A stretch of 64,000 nt of DNA from IMGVR_UViG_3300034073_005389:62001-126000, one strand, 5' to 3'. Positions 32,809-46,716 are shown, numbered from the stretch's first letter. Numbers and translations are program-made. The notes: generated from the letters alone by a model not told the origin.

Positions 32809-33136
32809 GTCTTCCTTTATGAATTTTAAATGCCTTATTTTTAAAATTAAAATATGAAGTATCAATACCCTCTATATTTCTTTTGCCATCTAACTCATAT
32901 ACTAAAATTCTTTTGTTAGGTAATTTAGTAGATGGATAAACTCCAATAATCTTTAACTTGTTACTATGAGTCAATGCATGACAATTGGCACATAATATTG
33001 CTAAATTATAATCATGATTATTGGTATTTACTTCTGTTCTCTCTATAATATGATGTAAATGTAATAGATTAGGGTCAGTTATGTTGCAAGTTTCTATTTC
33101 ACATTTATTTTTAATTAACTTACTTTTTTTCATCAA
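32795..33136 (-). CDS. Small HNH endonuclease
   Basis: C..C, HLHHII...NLAILCANCH...H. Confidence 0.75.
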   Translation of the reverse strand: MMKKSKLIKNKCEIETCNITDPNLLHLHHIIERTEVNTNNHDYNLAILCANCHALTHSNKLKIIGVYPSTKLPNKRILVYELDGKRNIEGIDTSYFNFKNKAFKIHKGRHEQE

Positions 33137-35136
33137 CTAAATTCTTTCCAAACGAACGAAGCAATAAAGTTATCAGTACCATTTCCTATTTTTTGTACTG
33201 CTAATACCAACTCATCTCTTGTCCCCGTAATAGATGCTCCTAGAGAATAAGTTCCTTGAATAATACTGCTAATTGGAGCTGCTTTTTGATTTCCATACCC
33301 TGAAGCAATAATATATCCTCCAGTTAAATAATTTGTTAATGTTCTAGAAACATCATATTCAGCATCACTACCAGTAATAGGTGTCCAAGATGCGGCATCT
33401 ACTCCATTAATGGTGGGATTTACAACTAATGCCCACCTAAAGTTAGAATTTGAGCTAGTGCATAAAATATCAATAGCTTCTGGTCTAATTACTACGCCAT
33501 CACTTGTAGATATCGTTCTTAAAGAAATTAAAGGATATAATTGAAGATTATTTACACCAGTTAATGAAGTAACCCCTCTGTCTGCGGCATAGGAAAGTCC
33601 TGGATTTTCATACCCTCCTTCTGACAGAATTGAACAGCAAATTTGCTCTAAAGATGATGCTCCTCCAGAAATATTCTCTATTTCTGCTCTTATTGGCAAA
33701 TTAGGAGTTGACATATAAACTGAATTAATGATGTTTGCATGATCAAATTTATGAACATAGTAAAAAGCACCATTAATTACAAATCCACAACGAACAGTTC
33801 CTACTCCTAACCACTCCACATCAATAACAAATATTTGAGCTTTTGTTACATCTAAAGTAAGTCCGCTAGGACCAGTACCATCTAAACGATCAATATTCCA
33901 GTTAGCTTGTAAAGCTGTATTTTCAACTACTACTCCAGTTACCTTGCTTCTAATAACGATACTGTTGGTAGAACCATTATTTTGAAAATAAATGCCGTTA
34001 TCTTCATCAAAATAACCTATTTTTTTAGAAACTCCAGCAGAAGGAGTTCCCATAACAAAAGTATTTAATATTAAAAAGCTAAGACCAGCTTGATAATTAA
34101 ATCTAGTTCTAGTTTGATGAATAGCTTTATCACCAGGATTAGTTACCGTTAAAGTAGTAGATGCTCTATTTTGAGAATAAGTAGATCCACCACCTGCTGT
34201 TAAAGCAGTGTCCCAAATAAGTACTTGAGCATTATGTATTTGCTTACTTTCAAAGATAGTAAATGGAGTAGATACTCTAATTCTACCAAAAGCATCTAAT
34301 GCAGCATATCCATCTAAAGAAAGTGGAGCGCTTCCATTTGCATTTAAAATATTTACGTCTAATGCTTGATGATTTGCATTTATGCTAGTACTAGTCACAT
34401 CAGCAGCAGTTGTAGTTCCTTTTGCGCCGCCTCTTACAATAGCTTTTTGTGTACCACCAGTTAAAGTAGCATCTAACGCTAATCCATTAGTAGTACCAAT
34501 ATTAGCAGTAACTGTACCATCTACAGTTAGAGATCCACCATTATCAGTTACTGGTTGAGCGGTGGTGCCTGTAGGGTCAATACGTAATGGTCTAGCAGCT
34601 ATACCAGTCTCTACTGAGCCTCCAGGCGCACTGGCTCTTAATACGGTTCCTAATACATATTGTGCGCCGCCATTGGTATCTGCATCAAAGACCCTGGCAC
34701 CTTGCATATTGGTGCCATCATTGAATCCAGCAGCTGTGCCTAAGGCTGGAAAAAAATCATTAAAAGTAGAAGATGTTCCACCAATAGATCCTACATTTAA
34801 AGTAACAGCATTACTGGTTGTGACAGCATCATTTTGCACGCTAATAGTAGATGGTGCACCTGCCTTTAATCTAAACCAAACTTTTACAATACTAGGATCA
34901 GTAACAACAAGATTACTAGTTCCGGTGTTAATATTTAATTCTGCGTGTACAGAAATACCATTAAATGAGAGTTCTACTACACCTGGACCTTGATTAACAA
35001 ATAATAAAGAATTTTTACTTGTTAAAGTAACGGCTATATCTGCATTAGTTCCGAAATTTGGTGCAGAAACTACTAATTTTTGAAAAAAGAATTTTTCTTT
35101 ACCAAAATTAATAGGTCCTAATGGATTACTAATCAT
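33133..35136 (-). CDS. Virion fibre/appendage protein with C-terminal lectin-like domain
   Basis: N-terminal domain paralogous to the 119-aa neighbour; fibre-like stalk (QPVTDNGGSLTVDGTV); DAFGRIRVS...WLGVG head domain. Confidence 0.55.
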   Translation of the reverse strand: MISNPLGPINFGKEKFFFQKLVVSAPNFGTNADIAVTLTSKNSLLFVNQGPGVVELSFNGISVHAELNINTGTSNLVVTDPSIVKVWFRLKAGAPSTISVQNDAVTTSNAVTLNVGSIGGTSSTFNDFFPALGTAAGFNDGTNMQGARVFDADTNGGAQYVLGTVLRASAPGGSVETGIAARPLRIDPTGTTAQPVTDNGGSLTVDGTVTANIGTTNGLALDATLTGGTQKAIVRGGAKGTTTAADVTSTSINANHQALDVNILNANGSAPLSLDGYAALDAFGRIRVSTPFTIFESKQIHNAQVLIWDTALTAGGGSTYSQNRASTTLTVTNPGDKAIHQTRTRFNYQAGLSFLILNTFVMGTPSAGVSKKIGYFDEDNGIYFQNNGSTNSIVIRSKVTGVVVENTALQANWNIDRLDGTGPSGLTLDVTKAQIFVIDVEWLGVGTVRCGFVINGAFYYVHKFDHANIINSVYMSTPNLPIRAEIENISGGASSLEQICCSILSEGGYENPGLSYAADRGVTSLTGVNNLQLYPLISLRTISTSDGVVIRPEAIDILCTSSNSNFRWALVVNPTINGVDAASWTPITGSDAEYDVSRTLTNYLTGGYIIASGYGNQKAAPISSIIQGTYSLGASITGTRDELVLAVQKIGNGTDNFIASFVWKEFS

Positions 35137-35144
35137 AATTTCCC

Positions 35145-35504
35145 CTAGTCTTTACCCCATGCCTCTATTCTGATATCAACTGGACCAGTAGATCCAGCTT
35201 TTAATCTAAACCATATTAAACATACAGTTCTAAAATCAAAAACTAAGGCAGATGAGGCAGTGCCTGGAATCATTTCTCCGTGCACTGTAGTGCCGTTAAA
35301 AGAATATTCTATTGAATTAGTAGCACCAGTACCGTAATTAATAAATGATACGCCCTGAGTTGGGAAAGTAATAACAACATCAGGACCATATCCGTTTTGT
35401 ATAGTATATCCGTCAGGAGCGCCAAAATGCGTCCAATTCACAGGTAAAACTTGGAAAAAATTGAAATCTCTTCCTTGTTTTTTAGTAATATTTTTATAAG
35501 CCAT
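35145..35504 (-). CDS. Small beta-sandwich virion protein
   Basis: 119 aa with FFQ...EYSFNG..VHGE...WFRLKAG; GGAG RBS. Confidence 0.55.
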   Translation of the reverse strand: MAYKNITKKQGRDFNFFQVLPVNWTHFGAPDGYTIQNGYGPDVVITFPTQGVSFINYGTGATNSIEYSFNGTTVHGEMIPGTASSALVFDFRTVCLIWFRLKAGSTGPVDIRIEAWGKD

Positions 35505-35546
35505 ATTTTGCTCCTGAAATAATGATATTTTATTATTATATAAAAT

Positions 35547-35574
35547 AAAAAAAGCCAGAATAAATTCTGGCTTT
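35547..35574 (-). terminator. Rho-independent terminator
   Basis: AAAGCCAGAAT-aa-ATTCTGGCTTT with a U-tract on the minus strand. Confidence 0.7.
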
Positions 35575-35599
35575 AAAATAATACTATAATAATTGTATT

Positions 35600-36904
35600 C
35601 TACACTGCTTGTACTCGAAGGCGTCGAAACGTCATGGTGCCGCCGCCGCCGTGCGCCGCGACCAGCGAGAGGGGGCGCCCGAGAGGGTTAGATCCCTGCG
35701 TAAATGGAGCCTCGTAGCCGGTAGGCTTCAGCGCACTGTACAGCCATCGCAAGGTAGAGGTCCACGCAGAACTGTACGTTCCGAAATACTGACTAATCAT
35801 GCCAGAGGCAGTCAGACAGCCCACCGCCACATCGTTTCCGCTTCTGGCCAGGTAACGAGCAGCCCCTCCGCTGGATTGGGATTGCTCGGCAACACACAGA
35901 TCGCTTTGAGACTGTATGTAAGTATTCGCTACTCCACCTGTTCCGGCTAGATTGACGGTGCTCGGAAATCCGTTTTGACCGACGATCGGTCCTTCCGTAT
36001 CCCACCGAAAGTAGAAGCCGACCTGCGGGTTGCCGCTTCCGCTGAAGGTGCATTGAGCCCAGAAGATGAGGGTTTGGAAAGGGTTGGTGATGCCGAGCTG
36101 AGCAAACGTGGCGTATAGCTGCATGGTGCCAAAGCCGGAGCCTGTGAACACGAGCCCCGTTCCATTGACGATTGACAAAGTGGTCTGCGTCGGCTGGTTC
36201 AGGTTGCTCGTGAAGGTGGCGCTCCCGGTCGAACCGGCGAACGTGACCGTCTGCCCGGTCGTGATGGACTGGGTTGGAAGGCTCGCGAAGTCCACCTCGT
36301 ACACGGTTTGAGGACCGCCGCCGCTTGCGATCAGCGTACTCGAAGAAAGCGTCAATCCAGAGCCTACTGTAACCGCTGAACCATCTCCAGCAGTCAATTG
36401 AGAAGATGTACCAGAAAAAGTAGCTGCTGGTCCTGTAGCGCCTGTAGGTCCAATATCACCTGTAGCTCCTGTAGGTCCTGTAGGTCCAGTTATACCTATA
36501 GAACCTCTAGCGCCTGTAGCGCCTGTAGGTCCAGTGGCGCCAGTAGCGCCCGTAGGTCCTTGAGGTCCAGTAGGTCCAGGTTCAGGTAATATGCCAGGAG
36601 GAGGCAATGCCGGACTTTCTAAAGCTCCAACAATAAATGATTCTTGTTGAGGATCAAATTGCTCTAAATCTATGGAGCTAGATACTATTCTGATATCTCC
36701 CACTCTTATCTTATTAGCTACTTCTCCTTTTATTAAAGAACTTCTAATATCAGACTCCCCAATTCCTTCTATATTTAATAAATCGTATGTTTGCAAATAT
36801 TCTATTGGAGTATTAAATATAGTAATACGTTTTCTTTGTCTAGATATATTTTGAACAGTAAAATTAATAGATGTAAGTTTAGGATATAAATCAGTAGCTG
36901 CCAT
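35600..36904 (-). CDS. Collagen-like fibre protein with a high-GC C-terminal domain
   Basis: About 17 Gly-X-Y triplets (GPT/GAT); abrupt GC increase over the last ~250 codons; GGAG RBS. Confidence 0.75.
36425..36582 (-). repeat. Collagen Gly-X-Y coding repeat
   Basis: 9-nt periodic units such as GGACCTACA and GGCGCTACA. Confidence 0.85.
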
Positions 36905-36971
36905 ATAATCTCCTATATTATTTATATTATAAATAATTTATAATACTATGTAAAAATATTAACTTAATTAT

Positions 36972-36997
36972 AAAAAAGCCAGGCATCAACCTGGCTT
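36972..36997 (-). terminator. Rho-independent terminator
   Basis: AAGCCAGG-catcaa-CCTGGCTT with a U-tract on the minus strand. Confidence 0.7.
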
Positions 36998-37024
36998 CAT
37001 TAGTTTGTATATCTAAAAATATTT

Positions 37025-38206
37025 TTATAATTTTTTATTAATCTCTATCCATTCATTTTCCCAAATAAAAACAAAATTGTATCCATTAGATCTAAATATT
37101 TTTTCTTTTTCAATTGTTCTACTATATAATTCTTTAAATGTTTTTTTACAAGTTTTATTATAATCATCTAAATTATAAATTTTAGGATTTCCATGATAAT
37201 AATCTCCCCAAAACTCATAAATTGTATTCGTCTCAGGAACATATGCATCTACTAAATATCTTTTTCCATTAATATATATTTTATGTTGTCGATATTTTTC
37301 ATCTATCTTTAGATAATTCAGCCACTCTATCTCTACTTTAGATATTCTATGAGAACAATAAGGACAATCACTACCCTTACTCCTAGCCCTCATATTAATC
37401 GATGCACTCCAACTATGACCCCTATTCTTACATATCCACCAAACTTTGTACCTACTACCACTTCCCGCAGTATACTCCTCCGGTCTTTTAACGTTTTTAC
37501 TATAATCCCATTCTACACATATCTCAGGATGAGTTACCAATAAATTATTCCTACTGTTTACACGCTTCCCAGCACAAAATGGACATCCTGTCTTACCATC
37601 TTTATAACTATTAACTACTCGATAAATTCTAGAATTAAAAACCTCATCACATTTTTTACATCTCCACTTCCCAATTTTAGCACTATAACTGCTTACCTGA
37701 TAAGCAAAAGGATGTAATAAATATCTAGATAACTCCGGATAATTTGACTCTAAACTATTTATCAAACTTACTTTTTTACTAGTACAATATGGACACCCTA
37801 TCTTATAAATAGTGCGGTTACATATTTTTTGATTAAAAAATAAATTGCACTTAGAACACTTCCACTCTACAACCTTGTCACTACCATAATTTAATAAATT
37901 ATAATCTTCTATGTTATTCTTTGACCACTCTAATATTAAATCAGGAGAATGCTGCGCTAAACTAGTTTTTAACTTAGCACTCCTAACTTGATTGGCAGGA
38001 TAATGCCTACATATCTTGGATTCATGAGATTTACGACGAAACCAATCCTTTAAAGAAATATAATACTCCTTCCCATTACATCGATTGCAATTAAAATAAT
38101 ATTTAATTTTTGAATATAATGTAATATTATCAGGAATAGGTCCGTTTTTAATAACATCCCACTCCAACTCCAATAAAGGATATTTAGCTAATAACTCACT
38201 TTTCAT
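37025..38206 (-). CDS. Zn-ribbon repeat protein with C-terminal PD-(D/E)xK / Vsr-like nuclease
   Basis: Repeated P.L..EW...N...W.C..C...CPYC units; C-terminal YLVDAY...IYEFWGDYYHGNP...IWENEW. Confidence 0.75.
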   Translation of the reverse strand: MKSELLAKYPLLELEWDVIKNGPIPDNITLYSKIKYYFNCNRCNGKEYYISLKDWFRRKSHESKICRHYPANQVRSAKLKTSLAQHSPDLILEWSKNNIEDYNLLNYGSDKVVEWKCSKCNLFFNQKICNRTIYKIGCPYCTSKKVSLINSLESNYPELSRYLLHPFAYQVSSYSAKIGKWRCKKCDEVFNSRIYRVVNSYKDGKTGCPFCAGKRVNSRNNLLVTHPEICVEWDYSKNVKRPEEYTAGSGSRYKVWWICKNRGHSWSASINMRARSKGSDCPYCSHRISKVEIEWLNYLKIDEKYRQHKIYINGKRYLVDAYVPETNTIYEFWGDYYHGNPKIYNLDDYNKTCKKTFKELYSRTIEKEKIFRSNGYNFVFIWENEWIEINKKL

Positions 38207-40340
38207 TTTTAAATATATAAACTAATTCACTCTTGGTGACCCCAGCCGTCTTAGTCAAATGCGACCTAACAGTCCTTAGGCTCACTTCTTCTACCACATT
38301 TCCAAATACCTCTGCCGCCATATTTACCATTCTAGGATAATTCTTCACGTTCAATCCAAAGTATTTCCCAGCTTTTAACATATATTTCGCATTCTCTAAG
38401 GTATTCTTCCAATATACATTGTAAAAATAATCCTCTCCCTTACTATACGCTTGACGATTATCTAAACAATAGACCTCTTGGGAATAATATGGTGGCGAAC
38501 TAAATACAAAATCTACACTATTCTCCCCTAACTTTACATTCTCCGATCCATCATTAATCAATGTCACATTCTCTAAACCTAATCCATCTTTCATCACTTC
38601 TAACTCATCTGTGGTCCATGGATCAACTCCAATATACTTTCTTCCACAACTAGCTGCCCCTAACATTCTACCTCCCCAACCAGCCGAGTAATCAAATACT
38701 GTCTCTCCCTTTCCGCTGTATTTCATATACAGGTATTTTGCAATTCCTGGCTTAAAAATAGAAATGCTAGGAACTACTCTAGATGATCTCATTCCCTGAA
38801 TTAACATCCTAAATGAAATATTAAATGTCTCTGTATTGTTAGGATCCTTCCAATCTAATCCTAACCTATTTTGAATAAGTTTGCGTAACTTATCATCATT
38901 ATTAAATATGTCTTTCATAGTAGGTTGCTTGTATTCTGTAGCATCATAAAACTTATGACAATAATATTTGCAAATATCTGTAGCCAATGAATCATTGTTA
39001 AATAACTCATTTACCGATAAATCAGGAGCATACTCTACTAGTTCTTTCCAACTTTTCTTTACTTCTGATAAATTATTTGGATACTGCCAGCCCAATGCCC
39101 TAAAGTGCTGAAATAATGGCTCAATTAATTCAAATCGCTCATCTCTGCTCAATGTCTTAACATAACTAGCTGTCAACAATTTTCCATTTATTTCTACAAT
39201 TTTATCGTAGTTAGTTCTATTATTGTTAGTGGTGCTTTTAATAGGATGATATTTATTATCACTGACTATTTTAGATACTGTTCTAGGATGTACTTGATGT
39301 TGTTTAGCTACTTCAACCAATTTAGCTCCATCCTCTACTTTATTAAGTATACTAATTTTAGCATCTTCTGATACTTTGTATTCTGTTCTAGAGAATCTAC
39401 GATTACCTTGTTGCTCTGCTAACTCTAGCATTCTTGTATATTTACGATCTAATCTAGTACTTTCTGTAGAGTCTTGGTATAGCCAAGTAGCTAATTTTAG
39501 TACTTTCTCATTGCCATTAGACTCTAATTCATAAGTATTATTGCCTGTTTTAGAAATACAACTTAAATTAACAATTAAATCTAATTCTTTTAAGATGATA
39601 CGTTGAATGGCTTCTCCACATTCTTTGGTGGTAGCTAAAGACCATTTCCATTCATTGTTGGAGCGATGTGCTAAACTACCATCTCCATCAAACATACCTC
39701 TTATAAATGGAACTGTAAATTGATTATCTAGCCATTGGGGATAGGTGATAATAAAGCTTTTGGCTCTAGGAACGCCCAAAGTTTTCATTTTTTCACATAA
39801 ATGTTTGCTGTATAGTCTAATACAACAAGTAGGATATTTTTTATCATTTAAATCAGATAAATATCTTTTTACTTTAGAATTTGGCAACCCAACAAAATTT
39901 GATAATTTAATTAAATGATTATAATCTTCGTCTTTTAAAGTAACACTAAAAGTACTTGTAATATCAGAATTATACGCATCTGCATAAAAAAAGCCTAACC
40001 AGTATGCTTTTTCTTGCGTATCAATAATGTCAAAAATATTCTCATTAAATTGAGTAAATCTGTGAGAAGAAGACTTGTCTCTCAATGCTCCCTTTTGATC
40101 TACCCATTTTTGAACTCGTCTTTTGTCAATATTGTATTTCATACCAAGAGATTTGGCGCTTACTCCTTGTTGATAAAGATCAACAATAAAAGGTATTTTA
40201 TCTTCAGTAAATTCCTCTCTAACTAAACAATAATTATTATCTTTAATTATTTGTTTTACTTCTTTTTCTTCCATATTTAATAATATAGAAATTCTTTTTG
40301 CCGCCAATCCATTCTCTGCCATCTCTTTTATTGTATTCAT
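38196..40340 (-). CDS. HTH-LAGLIDADG-HTH-amino-DNA methyltransferase fusion
   Basis: YWLGFFYADA and FIRGMFDGDGS; C-terminal VFDYSAGWGGR (SAM-binding motif I) and VFSSPPY (motif IV). Confidence 0.8.
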   Translation of the reverse strand: MNTIKEMAENGLAAKRISILLNMEEKEVKQIIKDNNYCLVREEFTEDKIPFIVDLYQQGVSAKSLGMKYNIDKRRVQKWVDQKGALRDKSSSHRFTQFNENIFDIIDTQEKAYWLGFFYADAYNSDITSTFSVTLKDEDYNHLIKLSNFVGLPNSKVKRYLSDLNDKKYPTCCIRLYSKHLCEKMKTLGVPRAKSFIITYPQWLDNQFTVPFIRGMFDGDGSLAHRSNNEWKWSLATTKECGEAIQRIILKELDLIVNLSCISKTGNNTYELESNGNEKVLKLATWLYQDSTESTRLDRKYTRMLELAEQQGNRRFSRTEYKVSEDAKISILNKVEDGAKLVEVAKQHQVHPRTVSKIVSDNKYHPIKSTTNNNRTNYDKIVEINGKLLTASYVKTLSRDERFELIEPLFQHFRALGWQYPNNLSEVKKSWKELVEYAPDLSVNELFNNDSLATDICKYYCHKFYDATEYKQPTMKDIFNNDDKLRKLIQNRLGLDWKDPNNTETFNISFRMLIQGMRSSRVVPSISIFKPGIAKYLYMKYSGKGETVFDYSAGWGGRMLGAASCGRKYIGVDPWTTDELEVMKDGLGLENVTLINDGSENVKLGENSVDFVFSSPPYYSQEVYCLDNRQAYSKGEDYFYNVYWKNTLENAKYMLKAGKYFGLNVKNYPRMVNMAAEVFGNVVEEVSLRTVRSHLTKTAGVTKSELVYIFKNEK

Positions 40341-40374
40341 ATTTTATAACCTTTGTAACAGTGAGTCCATCTCT

Positions 40375-40402
40375 AATATAGAGATATATCACATATTGTC
40401 AA
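40375..40402 (-). promoter_or_regulatory. Sigma70-like promoter upstream of the LAGLIDADG-MTase gene
   Basis: TTGACA-N16-TATATT on the minus strand, 35 nt upstream of the ATG. Confidence 0.5.
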
Positions 40403-40967
40403 GGTTCATTTTTAATTTTATATTTAAATATATTTTTTCTATAAAATTTATAAATTGATCATGGCTCATGGTTCTTTTGCACATATTACATGTTTTGCAG
40501 CAAACAACTACATTATCGATGGTATGAGGTTTAAATTGATTTATTCTATCTAGACCATTATAAATAAAGAATCCATTTTCTTTTGCATCTTTAGATCTTC
40601 GCGCGTCATAAAAAGATTCATTATATTTACCATTGGGTTCACTATTGCAATAATAACAATTTAAAGAAGATAATGTTAAAAACATTTCAAAAGAAATATC
40701 TCCATCTGAATATCTATTTTTATATATTTTTCTAGCAGAAGCTTCTTGTGGAGAATATTTTTTCCTAGCTTGTGTCATTTTTTTAATTCTATTTTTTCTT
40801 TGCTCTATATTTAAACATCCACAAGATTTAACTCTACCAGATCTTAATTTGTTAGTTGTTACTATTTTGTTTGTACCACAATCACATCGACAAAGCCACT
40901 TTGATTTAGCTTCTTCTATTACTTCTAATCTAGTAAATTTTATTCCAATAAGATTAATTTTTTTCAT
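40389..40967 (-). CDS. HNH homing endonuclease
   Basis: WLCRCDCG...KSCGC N-terminal module; CYYC...NGLDRI...NVVVCCKTCNMCK. Confidence 0.8.
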   Translation of the reverse strand: MKKINLIGIKFTRLEVIEEAKSKWLCRCDCGTNKIVTTNKLRSGRVKSCGCLNIEQRKNRIKKMTQARKKYSPQEASARKIYKNRYSDGDISFEMFLTLSSLNCYYCNSEPNGKYNESFYDARRSKDAKENGFFIYNGLDRINQFKPHTIDNVVVCCKTCNMCKRTMSHDQFINFIEKIYLNIKLKMNLDNM

Positions 40968-41089
40968 ATTATTATAATATACCAGTACTCAAAACAAAAT
41001 AAATTTAAAATTTTAACAAAATACTGTCTTGGCTCACATAAAATGCTGACAAGGTTCATGTATAAAAATACATGTTGTACAGGTAAAAT

Positions 41090-41120
41090 AAAAAGAGCTG
41101 CGATTGCTCGCAGCTCTTTT
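41090..41120 (-). terminator. Terminator after the major capsid gene
   Basis: AAAAGAGCTGCGA-ttgc-TCGCAGCTCTTTT; GCAA tetraloop on the minus strand. Confidence 0.85.
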
Positions 41121-41145
41121 ACAAGCTTTTTAAGCTGTTTTAGTA

Positions 41146-43349
41146 TCAGGCGCCGATTACTACTGACTTGCGACCAGCAGCAACACCACGAGGATTGACG
41201 ATACCGATACCGATGATTTCGCTAACTACCCATCCTAATTTAAGCTGTTTTGGTTCGTCAGCAGGAAGTACTTCGATGTCTTGGCGCACGGGCATGACAC
41301 CGACGAATTCAGGATCAGCACAACCATAGATAGTGCCTGGGGGAACGATCTTTGATACCATGATATCGGTGCCCCAGATATGAGCGTAGAGACCGGTTTG
41401 TAGTACTTCACGCATGGTGACGGGATCGAAATCACCGCCGCCTACGCCTTGACCACCACCTGAACCCCACTTGAGGATATCGGTAAATTCATTGATGTTC
41501 ATGAAGTATTTGGTGGTTACGAGGTCCCAGCGATCAATTTGTTGTTTGATTTCTACTAAGTCTCTCTTGAGTAGACCAGCGTCAGCAATATCTGTTACGG
41601 TGTTTTCTACTGAAGCGGCGGCATCGAGGGCGGCGAAGACGTTGGCATCTTCTTGAGCCATGATTTCTTGACGAGCCTTCTGGACTGCACGGTCGATGAC
41701 GTTGAAGCGGCGACGCTTAACTTCAGCGATACGTACTGTGGGGTTGGCGTAGATTTCGAATTCAGGAACTACAACGCGATCACCGAATACGCGGCTTTCA
41801 GGACCGGTACCGTTGCTGCTGATTACTACAGCGGCAACATCGATATCACGATCATAGGTGGGCATGGTGCCTTGGGGTACATAGGCAGTTGTTAAAATTA
41901 ACGTTAGTTAATTTGATAAGTCATTTCTGCTTATCTCTTCATATCTCTATGAAGGTCAGACTGTATCACCATCACTTTTTTGTGACGATTGGCATTCTAG
42001 TCGTTGAGGATTGTGGCATTAATTTATACTGCATACATTCTACGACATGGGGTCTAATGATGTCGCTGAGTTTTTGAGTATTTTCTTTATTTATATTTAT
42101 CTGAGAGTATTCTTTATTTTTATAAGTATATTTCATAACATTTGAATTAATGTCAAAACATCTTTTTAAATAATCTCTTAAAATATAATTTTCTTCTTCT
42201 GTAAAGCCCATTGTTGCTAACCTGGCATTAACACCAGATTTTAAATTTCCATCATCTTGAAACCAAACAGCTAAACAAAGCGGAGTCATATATATGTCTA
42301 AATTTTTTGGCACATGTTTAACTCTTGAAGAGTCATAAAACATATTTGCAAAATAATTTAAATCTTTATGACAAATTGTTGCGGTTTGTAGCATGGTAGA
42401 ATTACCTCTTTTATCTTCATACTCTCTATGAGTATTGATAAAAGGATCTAACATAGCTATTTTCCAAAAAAAATATGGAGATTGTGCTTTACAGTGGCTG
42501 AAAGATAATTTAAAATTTCCATTAGGACTATCTTTATGTAAACAACCATCTCCTAACAGTGTACCAACAATAATTTGTTTTTGTATACTATTAATAGGCG
42601 TTTCTCTTAAGATATCATATTTTCTGGAAGATGAGACTGGTTCTCTATTATTTGCTTTTAATATCCTAGATATTGCGGGAGCAGATATCTCATACCAATT
42701 AGCAATATTTTTAATAGTTTCGCCATTATCAAATTTATTAACTATATCTTTTATTTGATCTTGAGTAAAATCAGAAACATATTTTTTTCTAAATTTTACT
42801 TTTTGATTTTTTAAAATTTGCCTTGTTTTTTCATAAGAAATATGAAGCTTTTCGGCAATTTCTTTAATAGTTAATCCAGATTCATAGAAATTAGAAATCT
42901 CTTTTTCCATTATGCCACTCTTTCCTGCTGATTGTCTATATCATCTTAATTCTGTTACTATAACTATTTTGAAATTAACTTCTGTGTATAATTTATAGAG
43001 TGTTATAGTGATTAAGCTTTTAGAGTTTCCAGCATATAGCCAATTTTTAGATCCACTACCCTCAGTTTAATGGATCGACTACAAGGGCGCGACGTGCAAT
43101 TCCATGATAGTCTAAGTTTCTGCGGATAGGATTGGCCATTGCTTGAGCCAAAGCAATTTTGCCGTCTTGTGTCTGGATGGCGCGAGAAATTAATTCGTCG
43201 CGTTTTTCATCTGACAATGAGGGTTGACCAGCTAATCCCATGTTTGAGGGGGTGTTTTCTTCTAAAATACTAGCGTATTTTACTAATGTATGAAGCGCAT
43301 CCTTTAGCGATGATGCGTTCATTTCGCCTTTGCTATTGAACATATTCAT
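41146..43349 (-). CDS. Major capsid protein, spliced: exon 1 43349..43070, exon 2 41879..41146, 337 aa
   Basis: GGAG RBS at 43357-43360. The join restores ARRALVVDPL-PQGTMPTYDRD. PEFEIYANP...RRFNVIDRA..KA..EIMAQED is HK97-fold-like. Raised GC/codon bias and a strong terminator. Confidence 0.85.
41880..43069 (-). mobile_element. Group I intron (1190 nt) in the major capsid gene
   Basis: P1: exon GAUCCAU pairs with GUGGAUC, giving a U-G wobble at the splice site. P10: GGGUA/UACCC. Core elements P AUGCUGGAAA, Q AAUCAGCAGG, R CUCAACGACUA, S GAUACAGUC; P3 UUGGC/GCCAA; terminal G at 41880. Confidence 0.92.
41972..42910 (-). CDS. Intron-encoded LAGLIDADG homing endonuclease
   Basis: Two HTH segments, IVGTLLGDGC and LAVWFQDDG. 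Starts just after element Q; its 3' end overlaps R/P3. Confidence 0.9.
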   Translation of the reverse strand: MEKEISNFYESGLTIKEIAEKLHISYEKTRQILKNQKVKFRKKYVSDFTQDQIKDIVNKFDNGETIKNIANWYEISAPAISRILKANNREPVSSSRKYDILRETPINSIQKQIIVGTLLGDGCLHKDSPNGNFKLSFSHCKAQSPYFFWKIAMLDPFINTHREYEDKRGNSTMLQTATICHKDLNYFANMFYDSSRVKHVPKNLDIYMTPLCLAVWFQDDGNLKSGVNARLATMGFTEEENYILRDYLKRCFDINSNVMKYTYKNKEYSQININKENTQKLSDIIRPHVVECMQYKLMPQSSTTRMPIVTKK

Positions 43350-43508
43350 TCGAGATCTCCGAGTTGTAAAAGAATTGTTTGCCAGCATTCGCCAGCTGAC
43401 ATGCAAAAATGCATGTTCTTATATCTAATAATTTAATATTACTTATATTAATTTCTATTATAAAAATGCATATTACGATATATGCTTGACAGCATCTTTG
43501 AGGAAATA

Positions 43509-44678
43509 ATGAATAATAAAGATCTTATTGGGATAAAATTTAATAAATTAACAGTACAGTCTAAAGCAGAGAGTATACTTGGAGGAAAGAAAGTAAAAAG
43601 ATATTGGACAGCATATAATTGTAATTGTGAATGTGGGAATAAAATTATTGTAAAAACAGCTCATTTATTAAGAGGGCAAGTTAAATCATGTGGCTGTATA
43701 AATAAGAATGGTAGGTCTATTAAGCCTGGAGATAAATACAATAAATTAACTGCCTTAACATATAAAAAAGGAAGTAAATGGTTATGTCAATGTGATTGTG
43801 GAGAAATAGTAGAAATTAATACAGAAAGTATAATTAATGGCAATACAAAATCTTGTGGATGTTTAAAGTCTGAAATATCTTCTAAAAATTCTAATAAGTT
43901 AATAGAAGGTAGGAGAAAAAATGATCCTAGAATAGCTTCAGCTAGAAGAATTTGGCAAAGTTATTGTTACAATGACAAGATGTGCGAGATAGATTTTGAA
44001 AATTTTTATAAATTATCTCAACAAGATTGTTATTATTGTGGATTGAAGCCCAATAGAGAGTACAATTATTTTTTAACTAAATCATCTAATAGTTCTGAGA
44101 AGGCTAAAAAAGAAGGATTATTTATTTATAATGGGTTAGACAGAATAGATAGTAATAAATATCATACAATAGAAAATGTAGTATCATGTTGCAATGATTG
44201 TAATAGATGTAAGAATAATAGACCGGTTAATGATTTTTTAATTTGGATACAGAATATAAAAGAGAATAATAATAAAATAATAATTAGTAGTAGAGAAATA
44301 CCTAAAGGATCATTAGGAACATCGATTAAATGTATATTTTATAATTACAAGAAAGATACAGATTTAAAGATTGAGGAGTTTTATAATATTTCGCAGATGA
44401 ATTGTTATTATTGTGGATCATTACCGAACAATGTATTTAATAGGGCGAAGACAGATAAAAAAGCTTCTAAGAAAGCAAAGTTAGAAGGAGATTATATTTA
44501 TAATGGATTGGACAGGATTGATTCTAATTTAGGTCATGTTCGTGGGAATGTAGTACCATGTTGTAAGTATTGTAATTTTGGTAAGAGCAAATTAAGTATA
44601 GTTGAGTTTTATAATTGGGCTAATAGAGTTAAAAAGTATCAAAAAAAAGAGTCGGGAAAAAATCCCGACTCTTTATAG
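43509..44678 (+). CDS. Free-standing HNH endonuclease with duplicated domains
   Basis: Two CxCxCG...KSCGC modules and two CYYCG...YNGLDRIDS...NVV.CC..CN domains; GAGG RBS before 43509. Confidence 0.8.
   Translation: MNNKDLIGIKFNKLTVQSKAESILGGKKVKRYWTAYNCNCECGNKIIVKTAHLLRGQVKSCGCINKNGRSIKPGDKYNKLTALTYKKGSKWLCQCDCGEIVEINTESIINGNTKSCGCLKSEISSKNSNKLIEGRRKNDPRIASARRIWQSYCYNDKMCEIDFENFYKLSQQDCYYCGLKPNREYNYFLTKSSNSSEKAKKEGLFIYNGLDRIDSNKYHTIENVVSCCNDCNRCKNNRPVNDFLIWIQNIKENNNKIIISSREIPKGSLGTSIKCIFYNYKKDTDLKIEEFYNISQMNCYYCGSLPNNVFNRAKTDKKASKKAKLEGDYIYNGLDRIDSNLGHVRGNVVPCCKYCNFGKSKLSIVEFYNWANRVKKYQKKESGKNPDSL
44641..44674. terminator. Bidirectional terminator
   Basis: AAAGAGTCGGGA-aaaaa-TCCCGACTCTTT between convergent genes. 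Confidence 0.75.
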
Positions 44679-44699
44679 AGTACGTAATGCTAGATACTA

Positions 44700-45383
44700 T
44701 CAGGGTCCAACGGGTGGGTTGAAATAGAAGGTAACGAAGGTAAATTGACGTGGTGAAGCGCCTAAGCCTGAGGGGCTGTTTAGAGCGCTGACGAGGTAGC
44801 TAGGAGTATTGACTAATGAGCCATTGGTCTCGAAGTCAATTAAAGTAGCTACTACTGGAGCGCCACCTACTGCAGCAGGTGAGCCTACTGGAGTTAATTG
44901 TCCTGTTGAGGTATAGGTAAGGGGAGCGCCAGCTGATAGACCTACGTTGGTGGGTTGTAGACCGGTAGCAACAGCGGTATCAACTGCATCAAGTGATACA
45001 GCGTATACGCCGGGTTGGTGCCAGCAGGTTACTTTGCCTGAACCTGTAGCGGTGTTTGGTCCTAATACAACGCCTGAGGTAACTTTACCAACTGTACCAC
45101 CTACTACTGAACCGAAGAGGGTGCCGTAACCAGCAATACCTTCGTCAGCTAACATAAGAGGACGTGAAGTTGAAAGAAGATCAAAAGTTACAACTGTGCG
45201 CTTAGCAGTGCCTGATGGATTGACGTAACCGTCAAATACGTCAGCTGCAGCTAAATCAGGTGAGCTTAGGTTTAATGAAACAAAAGTTACTACTTCGCCA
45301 CCGAGGTAGCTGTTGATTTGTGTATCGTAACCGTCGAATTGACCGAGTGGGTTACCAGCTTGATTTACTAGTTTAAGAGCCAT
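44700..45383 (-). CDS. Putative capsid decoration/cement protein
   Basis: Upstream of the MCP gene with similar codon bias; TATGSGKVTCW motif; 2 DGY motifs. Confidence 0.55.
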   Translation of the reverse strand: MALKLVNQAGNPLGQFDGYDTQINSYLGGEVVTFVSLNLSSPDLAAADVFDGYVNPSGTAKRTVVTFDLLSTSRPLMLADEGIAGYGTLFGSVVGGTVGKVTSGVVLGPNTATGSGKVTCWHQPGVYAVSLDAVDTAVATGLQPTNVGLSAGAPLTYTSTGQLTPVGSPAAVGGAPVVATLIDFETNGSLVNTPSYLVSALNSPSGLGASPRQFTFVTFYFNPPVGP

Positions 45384-45489
45384 TGTGATTTCCTTTTTTT
45401 ATGCTACTATGAGCATGTCTTACATCTTAACTTACTTTTATACCTAATTAAGGTATAATCTTATAATTTATTATTAGTAGGTTAGTATA

Positions 45490-46716
45490 TTAAATTTCTG
45501 GAAGATCTGAAGATTGAGGGATTGTTGGTTTAACTTCTTGTTTAGGCTGTTCTTGTCTTCTTGACATACGTTCATTTACTTTATTTTTAACTTCTTGACC
45601 TTTTTCTAATAATTTAATAATTCTTTCTACTGAAGCTATATATGGATCCATTAATCTAATAATATTTTCTACTGCGGAATTAAATGGTGCCCAGCCACCT
45701 TCAATTGGCAATAGATCTGTAACTGAAGATCCAAGTCCTTTGTCTTCAAAACTTCTTTTTTCTGTATCAAATATTTCTATTCTTGTTTTGCCGCCAGCTG
45801 AAGTATATGTCTTTTCAAGAGATTTTTTAATATCTTTTATATCTAATAATTTTGCAAAAATTTCTTTTGCAGCTTCATCTCTGCCTCTAATATCTTCAAC
45901 ATTTTGATTTTTAGCAGCATCAACAGGATTTGTTTTTATTTGCGCTTGATCAATATTTTCTATTAATTTTTTAAATTTTAAATAAGATTCATCTAGCTCA
46001 ACAACCTTATCTGCTAAATAATTTAATTGTTCTTTAAATTGCAAACTTGGTTTTGCAGCAAAAAAAGATTGAAGCCAGCTTGGATTTGTCAATTTATTAA
46101 GCTCATCCATTAGTGCGCTATAATTTTTTTCATATCCTTCATCAGCAGCTGGTAATTTATTGGCTACATAAGCAGCACCCACTAAAGAAGCCAGTAATCC
46201 TGATATAACTTTTGTTCTTAATTTAAGAGCTTCTTTTTTAAGAGATTTTTTAGATTCTACTTCTTGTGCAACTGATTGTAAACAATTATCTGCTAATTTT
46301 CTTAATTTTTCTTTATTTCTATTATCTAAATCATTAGCTACTCTAACCAAAGATAATAAAAATTGTTTTTCAGCATATTTGCGTTGAGTTAGTAATCCAT
46401 CTGGATTTTTATTTACAATGCGTAAATTAATATTTTGTCTTTCAATGTTGTTTTCAACTAATCCATTTAATCTATCATAAGCAGGAGAAAGTACTACAGG
46501 CTCTTTATGAGCAATTTCCATAATATTATTTTTATATTTCATATCTGGAATTGTTTCTGGTTTTACTCCATACAATGCAGCTATAGCAGAAACATCTAAA
46601 GAATCTGCTCTAGGATTGTTTTCTAATGCTTTGAAACTTTTTTCAGAATCATTTGAAATAAGTTTTCTATCTTGAGCAATTTTAACAAATTCTTCAAAAA
46701 TGTCACTGCGTCTCAT
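45490..46716 (-). CDS. Putative internal head protein
   Basis: Helical; FVKIA and LKKEA motifs; one hydrophobic segment. Confidence 0.45.
   Translation of the reverse strand: MRRSDIFEEFVKIAQDRKLISNDSEKSFKALENNPRADSLDVSAIAALYGVKPETIPDMKYKNNIMEIAHKEPVVLSPAYDRLNGLVENNIERQNINLRIVNKNPDGLLTQRKYAEKQFLLSLVRVANDLDNRNKEKLRKLADNCLQSVAQEVESKKSLKKEALKLRTKVISGLLASLVGAAYVANKLPAADEGYEKNYSALMDELNKLTNPSWLQSFFAAKPSLQFKEQLNYLADKVVELDESYLKFKKLIENIDQAQIKTNPVDAAKNQNVEDIRGRDEAAKEIFAKLLDIKDIKKSLEKTYTSAGGKTRIEIFDTEKRSFEDKGLGSSVTDLLPIEGGWAPFNSAVENIIRLMDPYIASVERIIKLLEKGQEVKNKVNERMSRRQEQPKQEVKPTIPQSSDLPEI

What the first reader, a model, noticed from the sequence alone, without database searches (positions are those of the whole stretch)
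37025..40402. LAGLIDADG-DNA methyltransferase fusion coupled to a Zn-ribbon nuclease
Seen: one 714-aa ORF joins HTH, a two-motif LAGLIDADG domain, another HTH and an amino-MTase (FDYSAGWGGR, SPPY), with no intein motifs. The first LAGLIDADG motif is atypical (FYADAY). The ORF overlaps by 11 nt the start of a Zn-ribbon/PD-(D/E)xK gene. The pair has its own sigma70-like promoter and terminator inside the late region. Inference: a self-contained restriction-modification-like or homing-immunity cassette built from homing-endonuclease parts, possibly a long-site-targeted methyltransferase.
Basis: partly seen in the sequence, partly recalled or inferred. Interest (0 to 1): 0.68.

Follow-up and report, generated by a model that had tools for sequence, protein, structure and literature searches.

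The report
Homing endonuclease fused to phage methyltransferase
A jumbo phage carries a gene that joins a seemingly intact LAGLIDADG DNA-cutting enzyme to a complete methyltransferase; the join recurs in dozens of related phages, but it looks like a mobile selfish-gene cassette rather than a restriction-modification pair with the nuclease gene next door.

Summary
ORF 38196..40340 (-) encodes 714 aa: two HTHs, a two-motif LAGLIDADG core, an optional HTH, and a complete SPPY amino-methyltransferase module. It overlaps by 11 nt a 393-aa gene with four DUF4379 zinc ribbons and a Vsr-like PD-(D/E)xK domain.

The fusion is not an artefact. About 75 full-length homologues (35-90% identity) exist in metagenomic jumbo-phage contigs. 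Both LAGLIDADG aspartates are kept in 71-73 of 76, and the methyltransferase motifs in 75-76 of 76.

The restriction-modification reading is weakly supported.
- The methyltransferase is an accessory gene in a variable, endonuclease-rich slot between the major capsid gene and a collagen-like fibre gene. Only 8 of 49 capsid-matched relatives carry it.
- It occurs fused or standalone, with at least 4-8 switches on its tree.
- It is also fused to HNH, NUMOD3 and zinc-finger/Vsr modules.
- Only one sub-lineage of the 393-aa nuclease abuts the methyltransferase 3' end. It is absent from the nearest relatives, and the wider family is multi-copy beside unrelated phage genes.

Best reading: a self-contained mobile homing-endonuclease/methyltransferase cassette with a further homing endonuclease stacked behind it. 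Methylation-based immunity is not excluded.

The parts
40375..40409 (-). Cassette-specific upstream box (ATGAACC-TTGACA-16 nt-TATATT); promoter-like 5' end of the cassette
   Evidence: Best sigma-70-like match of the region, 11 of 12. The TGAACC...TATATT element aligns in 10 relatives. It is present downstream of the capsid gene in 9 of 9 methyltransferase-bearing loci against 3 of 66 others. It occurs once in the window, with 0.02 expected by chance.
38196..40340 (-). 714-aa LAGLIDADG homing endonuclease / amino-methyltransferase fusion ORF
40056..40340 (-). N-terminal HTH pair (aa 1-95) of the endonuclease module
   Evidence: HTH_28 at aa 52-82. phrog_4645 covers aa 15-307.
39420..40043 (-). 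Two-motif LAGLIDADG core (aa ~100-307). Motif 1 at 39975..40001 (D121), motif 2 at 39678..39707 (D220).
   Evidence: phrog_4645 at E 7e-45 over the full profile. Profile hits to the VMA intein endonuclease domain and to I-Tsp061I. D121 is kept in 73 of 76 and D220 in 71 of 76 fused homologues. dN/dS is 0.15-0.23.
39261..39374 (-). Optional middle HTH_23 (aa 323-360) inside a fast-evolving linker
   Evidence: HTH_23 at E 2e-7. Absent in many homologues. Linker dN/dS is 0.4-0.9.
38199..39218 (-). Complete methyltransferase module (aa 375-714): N-terminal helical domain plus Rossmann domain. Motif I at 38667..38696, SSPPY at 38487..38501.
   Evidence: Standalone homologues of 344-352 aa start exactly here. 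AF2 pLDDT is 91.8. Trm11/TrmN/Trm14 match at Z 16-18. Whole-module matches to giant-virus 'N4-cytosine DNA methyltransferases'. PADLOC mad2 at E 1.3e-11. Motifs are invariant.
37025..38206 (-). 393-aa free-standing homing-endonuclease-like gene: four DUF4379 zinc ribbons plus a Vsr-like PD-(D/E)xK nuclease (nuclease domain at 37028..37357)
   Evidence: Its start lies inside the last codons of the methyltransferase.
36975..36998 (-). Terminator-like hairpin plus T-run ending the cassette
40389..40967 (-). 192-aa HNH/EndoVII-like homing endonuclease gene inserted between the capsid gene and the cassette, flanked by two copies of the ATGAACCTTG(T/A)CA box (41046..41059 and 40396..40409)
   Evidence: phrog_374 and phrog_1035. 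Absent in L005, L003 and L002. Box copies.

Best explanation
The region is a stack of selfish homing endonuclease genes built around an accessory phage methyltransferase. It sits in the variable slot downstream of the major capsid gene of a phage-G-like jumbo phage (361-kb IMG/VR contig).

The 714-aa protein is a stable translational fusion of two parts. The first is a monomeric two-motif LAGLIDADG homing endonuclease that is probably still catalytically active. The second is a complete SPPY amino-methyltransferase, most likely a DNA m4C or m6A enzyme.

The cassette is transcribed from its own conserved upstream box. The fusion is translated from the endonuclease start codon, so the methyltransferase is made only as the fusion.

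Inferred mechanism:
- In mixed infections the endonuclease cuts the corresponding slot, or the capsid-gene 3' region, of relatives that lack the cassette.
- Repair copies endonuclease and methyltransferase together.
- The methyltransferase modifies phage DNA late in infection, for example against host restriction. This gives the cassette a selectable payload.
- The in-frame join ties the endonuclease's survival to that payload.

The 393-aa gene is a second, independent homing endonuclease (zinc-ribbon array plus Vsr-like nuclease). Its lineage homes to the 3' end of the methyltransferase gene and is translationally coupled to it. The coupling between the genes is evolutionary and at the level of expression, not a restriction-modification partnership.

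Shown: the architecture, its recurrence, residue conservation, sporadic distribution, and the cassette-specific upstream box.

Inferred: nuclease activity, DNA as the methylation substrate, the homing targets, and the benefit.
For: Recurrence of the fusion:
- About 75 full-length homologues at 35-90% identity, on contigs up to 394 kb.
- Only 2 full-length hits in 185k species genomes, both probably mis-binned phage contigs.

Selection on both halves:
- D121 is kept in 73 of 76 and D220 in 71 of 76. Methyltransferase motifs are kept in 75-76 of 76.
- dN/dS is 0.15-0.23 for LAGLIDADG, 0.03-0.15 for the methyltransferase and 0.4-0.9 for the linker.

Modularity:
- Standalone methyltransferases start exactly at the junction.
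- Fused and standalone forms interleave on the methyltransferase tree: 8 changes, at least 4 of them forced.
- The LAGLIDADG module also occurs free-standing or fused to a PF09924-like domain.
- The methyltransferase is also fused to zinc-finger/Vsr, HNH and NUMOD3 modules.

Accessory and mobile behaviour:
- Only 8 of 49 capsid-matched loci carry the methyltransferase. The slot otherwise holds a CCA-adding enzyme, a RelA/SpoT-like gene or other homing endonuclease genes.
- The upstream box is cassette-specific: 9 of 9 against 3 of 66.

The 393-aa gene as an independent homing endonuclease:
- It is absent in the nearest relatives. Window 35574..38179 is an indel relative to L005.
- 73 of 77 family loci lack this methyltransferase. 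The family is multi-copy within single contigs, with neighbours such as terminase and PhoH.
- Its fold matches Vsr, DUF559 and I-Bth0305I.
- The capsid gene itself is split by a LAGLIDADG-bearing insertion, and an HNH gene lies alongside.
Against: - No activity has been measured.
- The 46-78%-identical sub-lineage of the 393-aa nuclease is always found directly behind a methyltransferase gene, with an 11-nt or 4-nt overlap, in the loci examined. A functional methyltransferase-nuclease pair would look the same.
- At least four nuclease families have independently become fused to, or abut, this fast-evolving accessory methyltransferase. That is more than simple proximity predicts and hints at a functional link.
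- The closest solved folds of the catalytic domain are tRNA m2G methyltransferases, not DNA methyltransferases. The DNA substrate is therefore inferred from weaker sequence matches.
- dS is saturated, so the dN/dS values are rough.
Confidence: 0.55

Rival explanations
1. Homing-immunity or restriction-modification-like cassette. The methyltransferase methylates the recognition site(s) of the fused LAGLIDADG nuclease and/or the downstream Vsr-like nuclease in the phage's own DNA. The nucleases then cut only unmethylated DNA of competitors or the host.
For: - The nuclease is fused to, or overlaps, the methyltransferase in every member of the close sub-lineage examined.
- Recurrent independent fusions of LAGLIDADG, HNH and zinc-finger/Vsr nucleases to this methyltransferase.
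- Nuclease and methyltransferase catalytic residues are both conserved.
- The cassette is self-contained, with its own upstream box.
- The idea that homing endonucleases and restriction-modification systems are two versions of one strategy has been raised before (PMC1564403).
Against: - The methyltransferase occurs without either nuclease domain fused, and the 393-aa nuclease is absent from most methyltransferase loci.
- The wider nuclease family is not linked to this methyltransferase: 73 of 77 loci lack it, and sampled neighbours of ten family members (nine of them in loci lacking it) are not methyltransferases.
- Zinc-ribbon arrays and LAGLIDADG domains recognise long sites, so a homing endonuclease normally needs no methylation for self-immunity.
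- The linker is variable and under relaxed selection.
Confidence: 0.22
2. Domesticated LAGLIDADG. The endonuclease fold serves only as a long-site DNA-binding or targeting domain for the methyltransferase, giving a long-site-targeted methyltransferase with no cleavage.
For: - The methyltransferase module has no recognisable target-recognition domain after motif IV.
- Many family members carry HTH-only N-terminal extensions: HTH_23 in 40 of 92 extensions.
- LAGLIDADG folds have been domesticated elsewhere (WhiA, maturases; established knowledge).
Against: - Both catalytic aspartates are kept in more than 93% of fused proteins, unlike domesticated LAGLIDADG proteins.
- Standalone methyltransferases are common in sister lineages.
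- The same LAGLIDADG lineage occurs free-standing.
Confidence: 0.08
3. The C-terminal module is not a DNA methyltransferase. Instead it is an RNA (m2G/m6A) or protein-glutamine amino-methyltransferase, and the fusion has no bearing on DNA modification.
For: - The best solved-structure matches are Trm11, TrmN and Trm14 tRNA m2G methyltransferases at Z 16-18.
- PF01555 scores below its cut-off.
- A GIY-YIG/N-methyltransferase fusion once read as restriction-modification-like involved COG4123 (PMC1564403). I recall this as a tRNA methyltransferase family; that is from my own knowledge and was not checked here.
Against: - Sequence matches are to DNA methyltransferase families: phrog_498, PADLOC mad2 and Type II methyltransferase models, and a PDB N4-cytosine methyltransferase motif I.
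- Whole-module structural matches are to viral proteins annotated as N4-cytosine DNA methyltransferases.
- A standalone homologue in a Vibrio phage sits among dCMP deaminase, ThyA and DHFR genes.
- The invariant SPPY motif is typical of m4C enzymes (established knowledge).
Confidence: 0.1
4. The 393-aa protein is a Vsr-type mismatch-repair nickase coupled to the methyltransferase, as vsr overlaps dcm in E. coli.
For: - Vsr-like fold at Z 8.5 over 103 residues.
- The gene overlaps the 3' end of a methyltransferase gene.
Against: - The methyltransferase is an amino (SPPY) enzyme, not a C5 enzyme, so no T:G deamination problem arises (established knowledge).
- The protein has four zinc-ribbon DNA-binding modules.
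- The family is multi-copy and sporadic.
Confidence: 0.03

Closest known systems
Free-standing and intron-borne phage homing endonucleases (T4 seg/mob genes; I-Bth0305I of Bacillus phage 0305phi8-36; the PhiPA3 intron endonuclease, PMC11620839)
   Same: - Sporadic presence or absence among relatives.
- Location beside or inside highly conserved genes; here the capsid gene.
- Modular HTH or zinc-finger DNA-binding modules joined to a nuclease.
- Several families stacked in one locus.
- A Vsr-like catalytic fold, as in I-Bth0305I.
   Different: Here the LAGLIDADG endonuclease is translationally fused to a full enzyme, a methyltransferase, and the fusion has been kept across about 60% sequence divergence. 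The methyltransferase, not only a core gene, is the recurrent neighbour.
Type IIG/IIC/IIB restriction-modification fusion enzymes (MmeI, BcgI, BsaXI)
   Same: A single polypeptide with an N-terminal nuclease followed by an amino-methyltransferase whose motifs run I then IV.
   Different: - The nuclease is LAGLIDADG, not PD-(D/E)xK.
- There is no C-terminal target-recognition domain or S subunit.
- The methyltransferase is functional as a standalone gene in sister phages.
- The linker is variable.
- There is no evidence that both activities read one site.
GIY-YIG (Slx1-like)/N-methyltransferase fusions and operons (Dunin-Horkawicz et al. 2006, PMC1564403)
   Same: A nuclease domain of a superfamily that also includes homing endonucleases is recurrently fused to, or adjacent to, an (N/D/S)PPY amino-methyltransferase. 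The same question arises: functional link or a by-product of mobility.
   Different: - A different nuclease fold and a different methyltransferase family.
- Bacterial chromosomes there, a jumbo-phage accessory slot here.
- In the fusions described there the methyltransferase is N-terminal to the nuclease.
Inteins with LAGLIDADG endonuclease domains
   Same: A LAGLIDADG endonuclease translated in-frame with a host protein.
   Different: There is no Hint splicing domain and no N-extein. The endonuclease stays attached at the N-terminus of the methyltransferase.
E. coli dcm-vsr overlapping gene pair
   Same: A Vsr-fold nuclease gene whose start overlaps the 3' end of a methyltransferase gene.
   Different: An amino-methyltransferase instead of a C5 enzyme. 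The nuclease carries four DUF4379 zinc ribbons and belongs to a multi-copy, sporadic phage family.

Membership tests
LAGLIDADG homing endonucleases (monomeric, two-motif) | Two LAGLIDADG helices, each ending in a catalytic acidic residue | tested here: met
   WLGFFYADA (D121) and FIRGMFDGDG (D220). Kept in 73 of 76 and 71 of 76 homologues.
LAGLIDADG homing endonucleases (monomeric, two-motif) | Significant match to family profiles or fold | tested here: met
   - phrog_4645 at E 7e-45 over the full length.
- PF14528 reaches only 20.2 bits against a cut-off of 22.5 in the window protein, but matches 29 N-terminal extensions of relatives down to E 5.8e-15.
- Profile hits to the VMA intein endonuclease domain (E 0.0016) and to I-Tsp061I.
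- The fold itself was not modelled.
LAGLIDADG homing endonucleases (monomeric, two-motif) | Site-specific DNA cleavage and homing | not testable with these tools
   Only indirect evidence: purifying selection and sporadic distribution.
Inteins | Hint splicing blocks flanking the endonuclease, with N- and C-exteins | tested here: not met
   No intein or Hint Pfam hit. The endonuclease module starts at residue 1, so there is no N-extein.
Amino (N6-A / N4-C) DNA methyltransferases | SAM-binding motif I (FxGxG-like) and catalytic motif IV (D/N/S)PP(Y/F) on a Rossmann fold | tested here: met
   DYSAGWGGR and SSPPY are invariant. AF2 pLDDT is 91.8, with Z 16-18 to amino-methyltransferases.
Amino (N6-A / N4-C) DNA methyltransferases | Pfam N6_N4_Mtase (PF01555) above its gathering score | tested here: not met
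   16.5 bits against a cut-off of 26.7. The motif order is I then IV, permuted relative to the beta-class model. Some relatives do pass (L103, 41.9 bits).
Amino (N6-A / N4-C) DNA methyltransferases | DNA as substrate and a defined target motif | not testable with these tools
   Indirect evidence only: phrog_498, PADLOC mad2 and Type II methyltransferase models, and BFVD annotations. The top PDB folds are tRNA methyltransferases.
Type II restriction-modification system (separate R and M genes) | Nuclease and methyltransferase genes consistently co-occur | tested here: not met
   - The nuclease adjoins the methyltransferase in only six distinct lineages (window, L008, L084, L086, L088, L103). 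That is a small minority of the 38 distinct methyltransferase modules found in the first IMG/VR set.
- It is absent from the nearest relatives L005/L006.
- 73 of 77 nuclease-family loci lack this methyltransferase.
Type IIG/IIC fused restriction-modification enzymes | PD-(D/E)xK nuclease plus gamma-type methyltransferase plus a shared target-recognition domain in one chain | tested here: not met
   The nuclease is LAGLIDADG. The chain ends about 96 aa after motif IV with only Rossmann elements, so there is no target-recognition domain.
Vsr / DUF559 / I-Bth0305I-like PD-(D/E)xK nucleases (393-aa protein) | Vsr-like fold with a conserved Asp and a G-x-x-x-H motif | tested here: met
   - AF2 pLDDT is 95.
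- 1cw0 at Z 8.5 with 103 residues aligned; 3hrl at Z 7.1; 3r3p at Z 6.8 with 21% identity.
- D320, G334, H338, G339 and P341 are invariant.
DUF4379 treble-clef zinc-ribbon proteins (393-aa protein) | PF14311 above its cut-off | tested here: met
   121 bits, E 2e-35, four repeats.
Vsr mismatch-repair nickases linked to C5 methyltransferases | Partner is a cytosine-C5 methyltransferase | tested here: not met
   The partner carries the SPPY amino-methyltransferase motif and has no C5-methyltransferase hits.

The most novel reading that the evidence does not exclude
The cassette is a hybrid between a homing endonuclease and a restriction-modification system. A long-site nuclease (LAGLIDADG, and separately the zinc-ribbon/Vsr enzyme) would have its self-immunity supplied by the physically fused or translationally coupled methyltransferase rather than by disruption of its target site. 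The phage could then keep the target sequence, cut unmethylated co-infecting relatives, and spread nuclease and methyltransferase as one unit. The repeated capture of this methyltransferase by at least four nuclease families would then be functional convergence.
Probability: 0.2. Interest if true: 0.85.

Novelty: new variant of a known kind. Interest (0 to 1): 0.55.

Why it matters
Homing endonucleases and restriction-modification systems are the two classic selfish nuclease strategies, and natural intermediates between them are essentially unknown. This is a conserved family in which an apparently active LAGLIDADG enzyme is covalently joined to a complete methyltransferase. The same methyltransferase has also been captured by HNH, NUMOD3 and zinc-finger/Vsr modules.

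Two outcomes are possible, and both are testable with a methylome and a cleavage assay.
- If the link is only evolutionary, it is a clear case of a homing endonuclease carrying a selectable cargo and tying its own survival to that cargo's reading frame.
- If methylation controls cleavage, it would be a new kind of single-chain, long-site restriction-modification or competition system.

Either way, natural LAGLIDADG-methyltransferase chimeras could serve as scaffolds for targeted DNA methylation. The locus also shows how densely the capsid-gene neighbourhood of phage-G-like jumbo phages is colonised by mobile nucleases.

Tried and rejected
- Megablast of the region against 50,697 phage records found no match.
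- An Rfam scan of 36000..46000 found no group I intron or other credible RNA family, only two sub-threshold sRNA hits.
- A single-protein related-locus search with the 393-aa protein found only the source contig. An alignment was needed.
- PADLOC gave nothing for the 393-aa or HNH proteins. NCBIfam gave nothing useful.
- My interim conclusion was that the methyltransferase is a conserved core neighbour of the capsid gene and therefore a natural homing target. That came from loci seeded with the fusion itself. A capsid-seeded census overturned it: only 8 of 49 loci carry the methyltransferase.
- Assembly artefact or one-off fusion: rejected.
- Separately initiated methyltransferase: rejected for ATG starts, since there are none between codons 305 and 474. 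A TTG at codon 341 with GGAG 5 nt upstream lies inside the HTH and its position is not conserved.
- The TGAACC box as a general late promoter: rejected. It is locus-specific in the window.
- Complex prediction was not used, because no protein-protein binding is claimed.


Full report
**What is there.**
The window comes from a 361,490-bp IMG/VR contig (IMGVR_UViG_3300034073_005389). Its major capsid protein is 51% identical to gp27 of Bacillus phage G, so this is a phage-G-like jumbo phage.

On the minus strand, ORF 38196..40340 encodes 714 aa and ORF 37025..38206 encodes 393 aa. They overlap by 11 nt.

The 714-aa protein has these parts:
- An HTH pair, aa 1-95.
- A two-motif LAGLIDADG core: WLGFFYADA at aa 114-122 and FIRGMFDGDG at aa 212-221. 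phrog_4645 covers the whole endonuclease at E 7e-45.
- An HTH_23, aa 323-360.
- An amino-methyltransferase with motif I (FDYSAGWGGR, aa 549-558) before motif IV (SSPPY, aa 614-618).

There is no intein or Hint signal and no N-extein.

The 393-aa protein has four DUF4379 zinc ribbons (E 2e-35). Its C-terminal domain modelled at pLDDT 95. That domain matches Vsr (1cw0, Z 8.5, 103 residues aligned), a DUF559 protein (3hrl, Z 7.1) and the catalytic domain of homing endonuclease I-Bth0305I (3r3p, Z 6.8, 21% identity). D320, G334, H338, G339 and P341 are invariant in its family.

A TTGACA-16-TATATT match lies at 40402..40375 and a hairpin plus T-run at 36998..36975.

**The fusion is real and old.**
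A full-length search returned about 80 proteins covering 100% of the query, down to about 35% identity, on contigs up to 394 kb.

In 76 aligned fused proteins:
- The two LAGLIDADG catalytic aspartates are kept in 73 and 71.
- The methyltransferase motifs (D550, S552, G554, G556, R558, D573, S599, E600, SSPPY) are kept in 75-76.

dN/dS is 0.15-0.23 for the LAGLIDADG half, 0.03-0.15 for the methyltransferase and 0.4-0.9 for the linker with its optional HTH. dS is about 1 or more, so these values are rough.

Pairwise identities of the two halves correlate (Spearman 0.75). There are clear module swaps in P0063 and P0081.

Standalone methyltransferases of 344-352 aa begin M-K-Y/F-D-E-I-I-x-I-N-G. 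This aligns to the internal N-Y-D-K-I-V-E-I-N-G of the window protein. There is no ATG between codons 305 and 474. The methyltransferase is therefore made only as the fusion.

Among one genome for each of 185,579 species, only two contigs carry the full fusion. One is a 4.9-kb contig and the other a 383-kb contig, and both are probably phage DNA binned into MAGs.

**What the methyltransferase module is.**
AF2 gives a confident two-domain model of aa 375-714, with pLDDT 91.8. It has an N-terminal helical domain and a Rossmann domain that ends without a target-recognition domain.

- Against solved structures, the catalytic domain is closest to the amino-methyltransferases Trm11, TrmN and Trm14 (Z 16-18).
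- Against predicted viral structures, the whole module matches giant-virus proteins annotated as N4-cytosine DNA methyltransferases (TM 0.66-0.74).
- Sequence-level links are to DNA methyltransferases. These are phrog_498, a Vibrio-phage 'N-4 cytosine methylase' sitting among dCMP deaminase, ThyA and DHFR genes, a PDB N4-cytosine methyltransferase motif I, and PADLOC mad2 (E 1.3e-11) plus Type II methyltransferase models.

A DNA m4C or m6A activity is therefore likely but inferred.

The family is large: 1,349 clusters at 50% identity score E <= 1e-30. Of the 145 best-matching representatives tabulated from the 150 listed, 50 are standalone and 92 have N-terminal extensions of 100 aa or more. 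Among those extensions, 40 carry HTH_23, 29 LAGLIDADG_3, 6 HNH repeats, 5 GNAT and 4 TnsA-like domains.

**Genomic context.**
Loci seeded with the fusion all place the methyltransferase beside the capsid gene. In that set 19 modules are fused to LAGLIDADG, 14 are standalone and 5 have other extensions. On the methyltransferase tree, fused and standalone forms interleave: 8 changes, at least 4 of them forced by well-supported branches.

That sample was biased by its seed. A census seeded with the capsid protein (94-100% amino-acid identity) gave a different picture. Only 8 of 49 evaluable loci carry the methyltransferase: 7 fused, and 1 with both a fused and a standalone copy.

The general order is capsid gene, then a variable slot of 0.9-3.7 kb, then a collagen-like fibre gene. 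In methyltransferase-less relatives the slot holds a CCA-adding enzyme, a RelA/SpoT-like gene, a 234-aa ORF, HNH genes or other LAGLIDADG genes.

The methyltransferase is therefore an accessory gene in a variable, endonuclease-rich slot.

The cassette has a conserved 5' element, (A/G)TGAACC-N4-CA ... TATATT, between the capsid terminator and the fusion start. This element is present in 9 of 9 methyltransferase-bearing loci against 3 of 66 others. One of those three is a truncated L005-like contig.

**Other fusions.**
The methyltransferase module is also fused to other homing-endonuclease-type modules:
- HTH plus zinc-finger repeats plus a Vsr-like nuclease in P0082 and P0085, whose nuclease motif resembles that of the 393-aa protein.
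- HNH in P0097 and P0098.
- NUMOD3 in P0094.

The LAGLIDADG module occurs free-standing (L020/L021, L023, L027, L035) or fused to a PF09924-like domain (P0086, P0089, P0092, P0093). These are still in the capsid-adjacent locus. In L015 and L084, a divergent LAGLIDADG-methyltransferase fusion sits directly upstream of a second, standalone methyltransferase.

**The 393-aa neighbour.**
Its close relatives (46-78% identity) all lie directly behind a methyltransferase gene. The overlap is 11 nt in L084 and L086 and 4 nt in L088. In L008 the nuclease also directly abuts the methyltransferase. This holds whether the methyltransferase is fused or standalone.

It is nevertheless absent from the nearest relatives. 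Window 35574..38179, holding the nuclease and the collagen-like gene, is an indel relative to L005/L006. It is also absent from most other methyltransferase loci.

In the wider family, 73 of 77 IMG/VR loci have no such methyltransferase within 5 kb. Copies are multiple within single contigs, with four in one 71-kb contig. Sampled neighbours are terminase, an intein-bearing PhoH, a PD-(D/E)xK nuclease and an M24 peptidase.

That is the behaviour of a homing endonuclease family in which one lineage has a fixed homing position at the methyltransferase 3' end. It is not the behaviour of an obligate restriction partner. The pattern still cannot formally exclude a functional pair.

**Conclusion.**
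The best-supported reading (about 0.55) is a mobile, self-contained homing-endonuclease/methyltransferase cassette, with a second homing endonuclease stacked at its 3' end and an HNH gene at its 5' end.

Under this reading the LAGLIDADG enzyme drives spread among co-infecting relatives. The methyltransferase is the selectable cargo. The in-frame join ties the endonuclease to that cargo.

The main rival (about 0.2) is that methylation provides immunity against one or both nucleases. The recurrent capture of this methyltransferase by at least four nuclease families, and the fixed methyltransferase-nuclease junction, keep that possibility alive.

My literature searches found no description of natural LAGLIDADG-methyltransferase fusions. 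The nearest precedent is the GIY-YIG/N-methyltransferase association discussed in PMC1564403. Heavy homing-endonuclease and intron loads in jumbo phages are documented in PMC12880540, and PMC11620839 was retrieved in the same literature search.

Noticed in passing
window 41878..43067 (-), flanked by capsid exons ~43068..43346 and 41146..41877: The major capsid gene is split by a 1.19-kb insertion carrying a 312-aa LAGLIDADG_2 ORF (41972..42910). The uninterrupted gene in L005 fixes the junction at ...D-P-L | P-Q-G-T-M-P.... The boundaries allow a U before the 5' splice site and a G as the last intron base, as in group I introns, but Rfam gives no hit. Relatives carry zero to two (possibly three) such insertions at different capsid positions (L032, L036, L038, L039, L044).
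   Followed up: partly
window 40389..40967 (-), with repeats at 41046..41059 and 40396..40409: The 192-aa HNH/EndoVII-like gene is bracketed by two copies of ATGAACCTTG(T/A)CA, the 5' box of the methyltransferase cassette. Relatives without the HNH gene have one copy. It looks like an insertion into, or duplication of, that box.
   Followed up: partly
window 43482..44678 (+): A 398-aa ORF made of tandem partial copies of the HNH192-type protein (phrog_374 and phrog_1035 each match two stretches). It lies on the opposite strand just upstream of the capsid gene. This is another homing-endonuclease-like gene in the same neighbourhood.
   Followed up: no
window 35551..35574 and 36975..36998 (-): Two terminator hairpins with nearly the same stem (AAGCCAG...CTGGCTT) bracket the collagen-like gene. 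The 2.6-kb block 35574..38179 (nuclease plus collagen-like gene) is missing in L005/L006, so the repeated hairpins may have mediated the indel.
   Followed up: partly
window 33000..45000: Strong GC mosaic. Capsid exons and the collagen-like gene are 45-58% GC, while the homing endonuclease genes, the methyltransferase and most other DNA are 20-35% GC. The capsid protein stays 94-99% identical while its DNA is only about 79% identical between relatives.
   Followed up: no
L261 7807..10385, L253 5500..6843, L293 7766..8383: In methyltransferase-less relatives the same slot downstream of the capsid gene holds a CCA-adding enzyme/poly(A) polymerase-family gene, a RelA/SpoT-like ORF and a conserved 234-aa ORF. 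The slot is a general accessory-gene hotspot.
   Followed up: partly
P0086, P0089, P0092, P0093 (loci L089..L092): The same LAGLIDADG lineage is fused to a ~270-aa C-terminal domain weakly similar to PF09924 (LPG_synthase_C). It lies next to a standalone or HTH-fused methyltransferase.
   Followed up: partly
L106, L108, L110, L111 (IMGVR_UViG_3300015370_000014, 71 kb): At least four paralogues of the DUF4379/Vsr-like nuclease occur in one 71-kb viral contig. Other contigs carry two. The fold search also matched RAP-domain mitoribosomal proteins (Z 9.2), and DUF4379 proteins of kinetoplastid mitoribosomes matched by sequence.
   Followed up: no
L173 (JAIXLO010000160.1, 383,427-bp contig in a Chitinophagales MAG): A 383-kb contig binned as a bacterial MAG carries a 27%-identical full-length LAGLIDADG-methyltransferase fusion. 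It is probably a jumbo-phage genome inside a MAG, and a weak hint at a Bacteroidota host.
   Followed up: no
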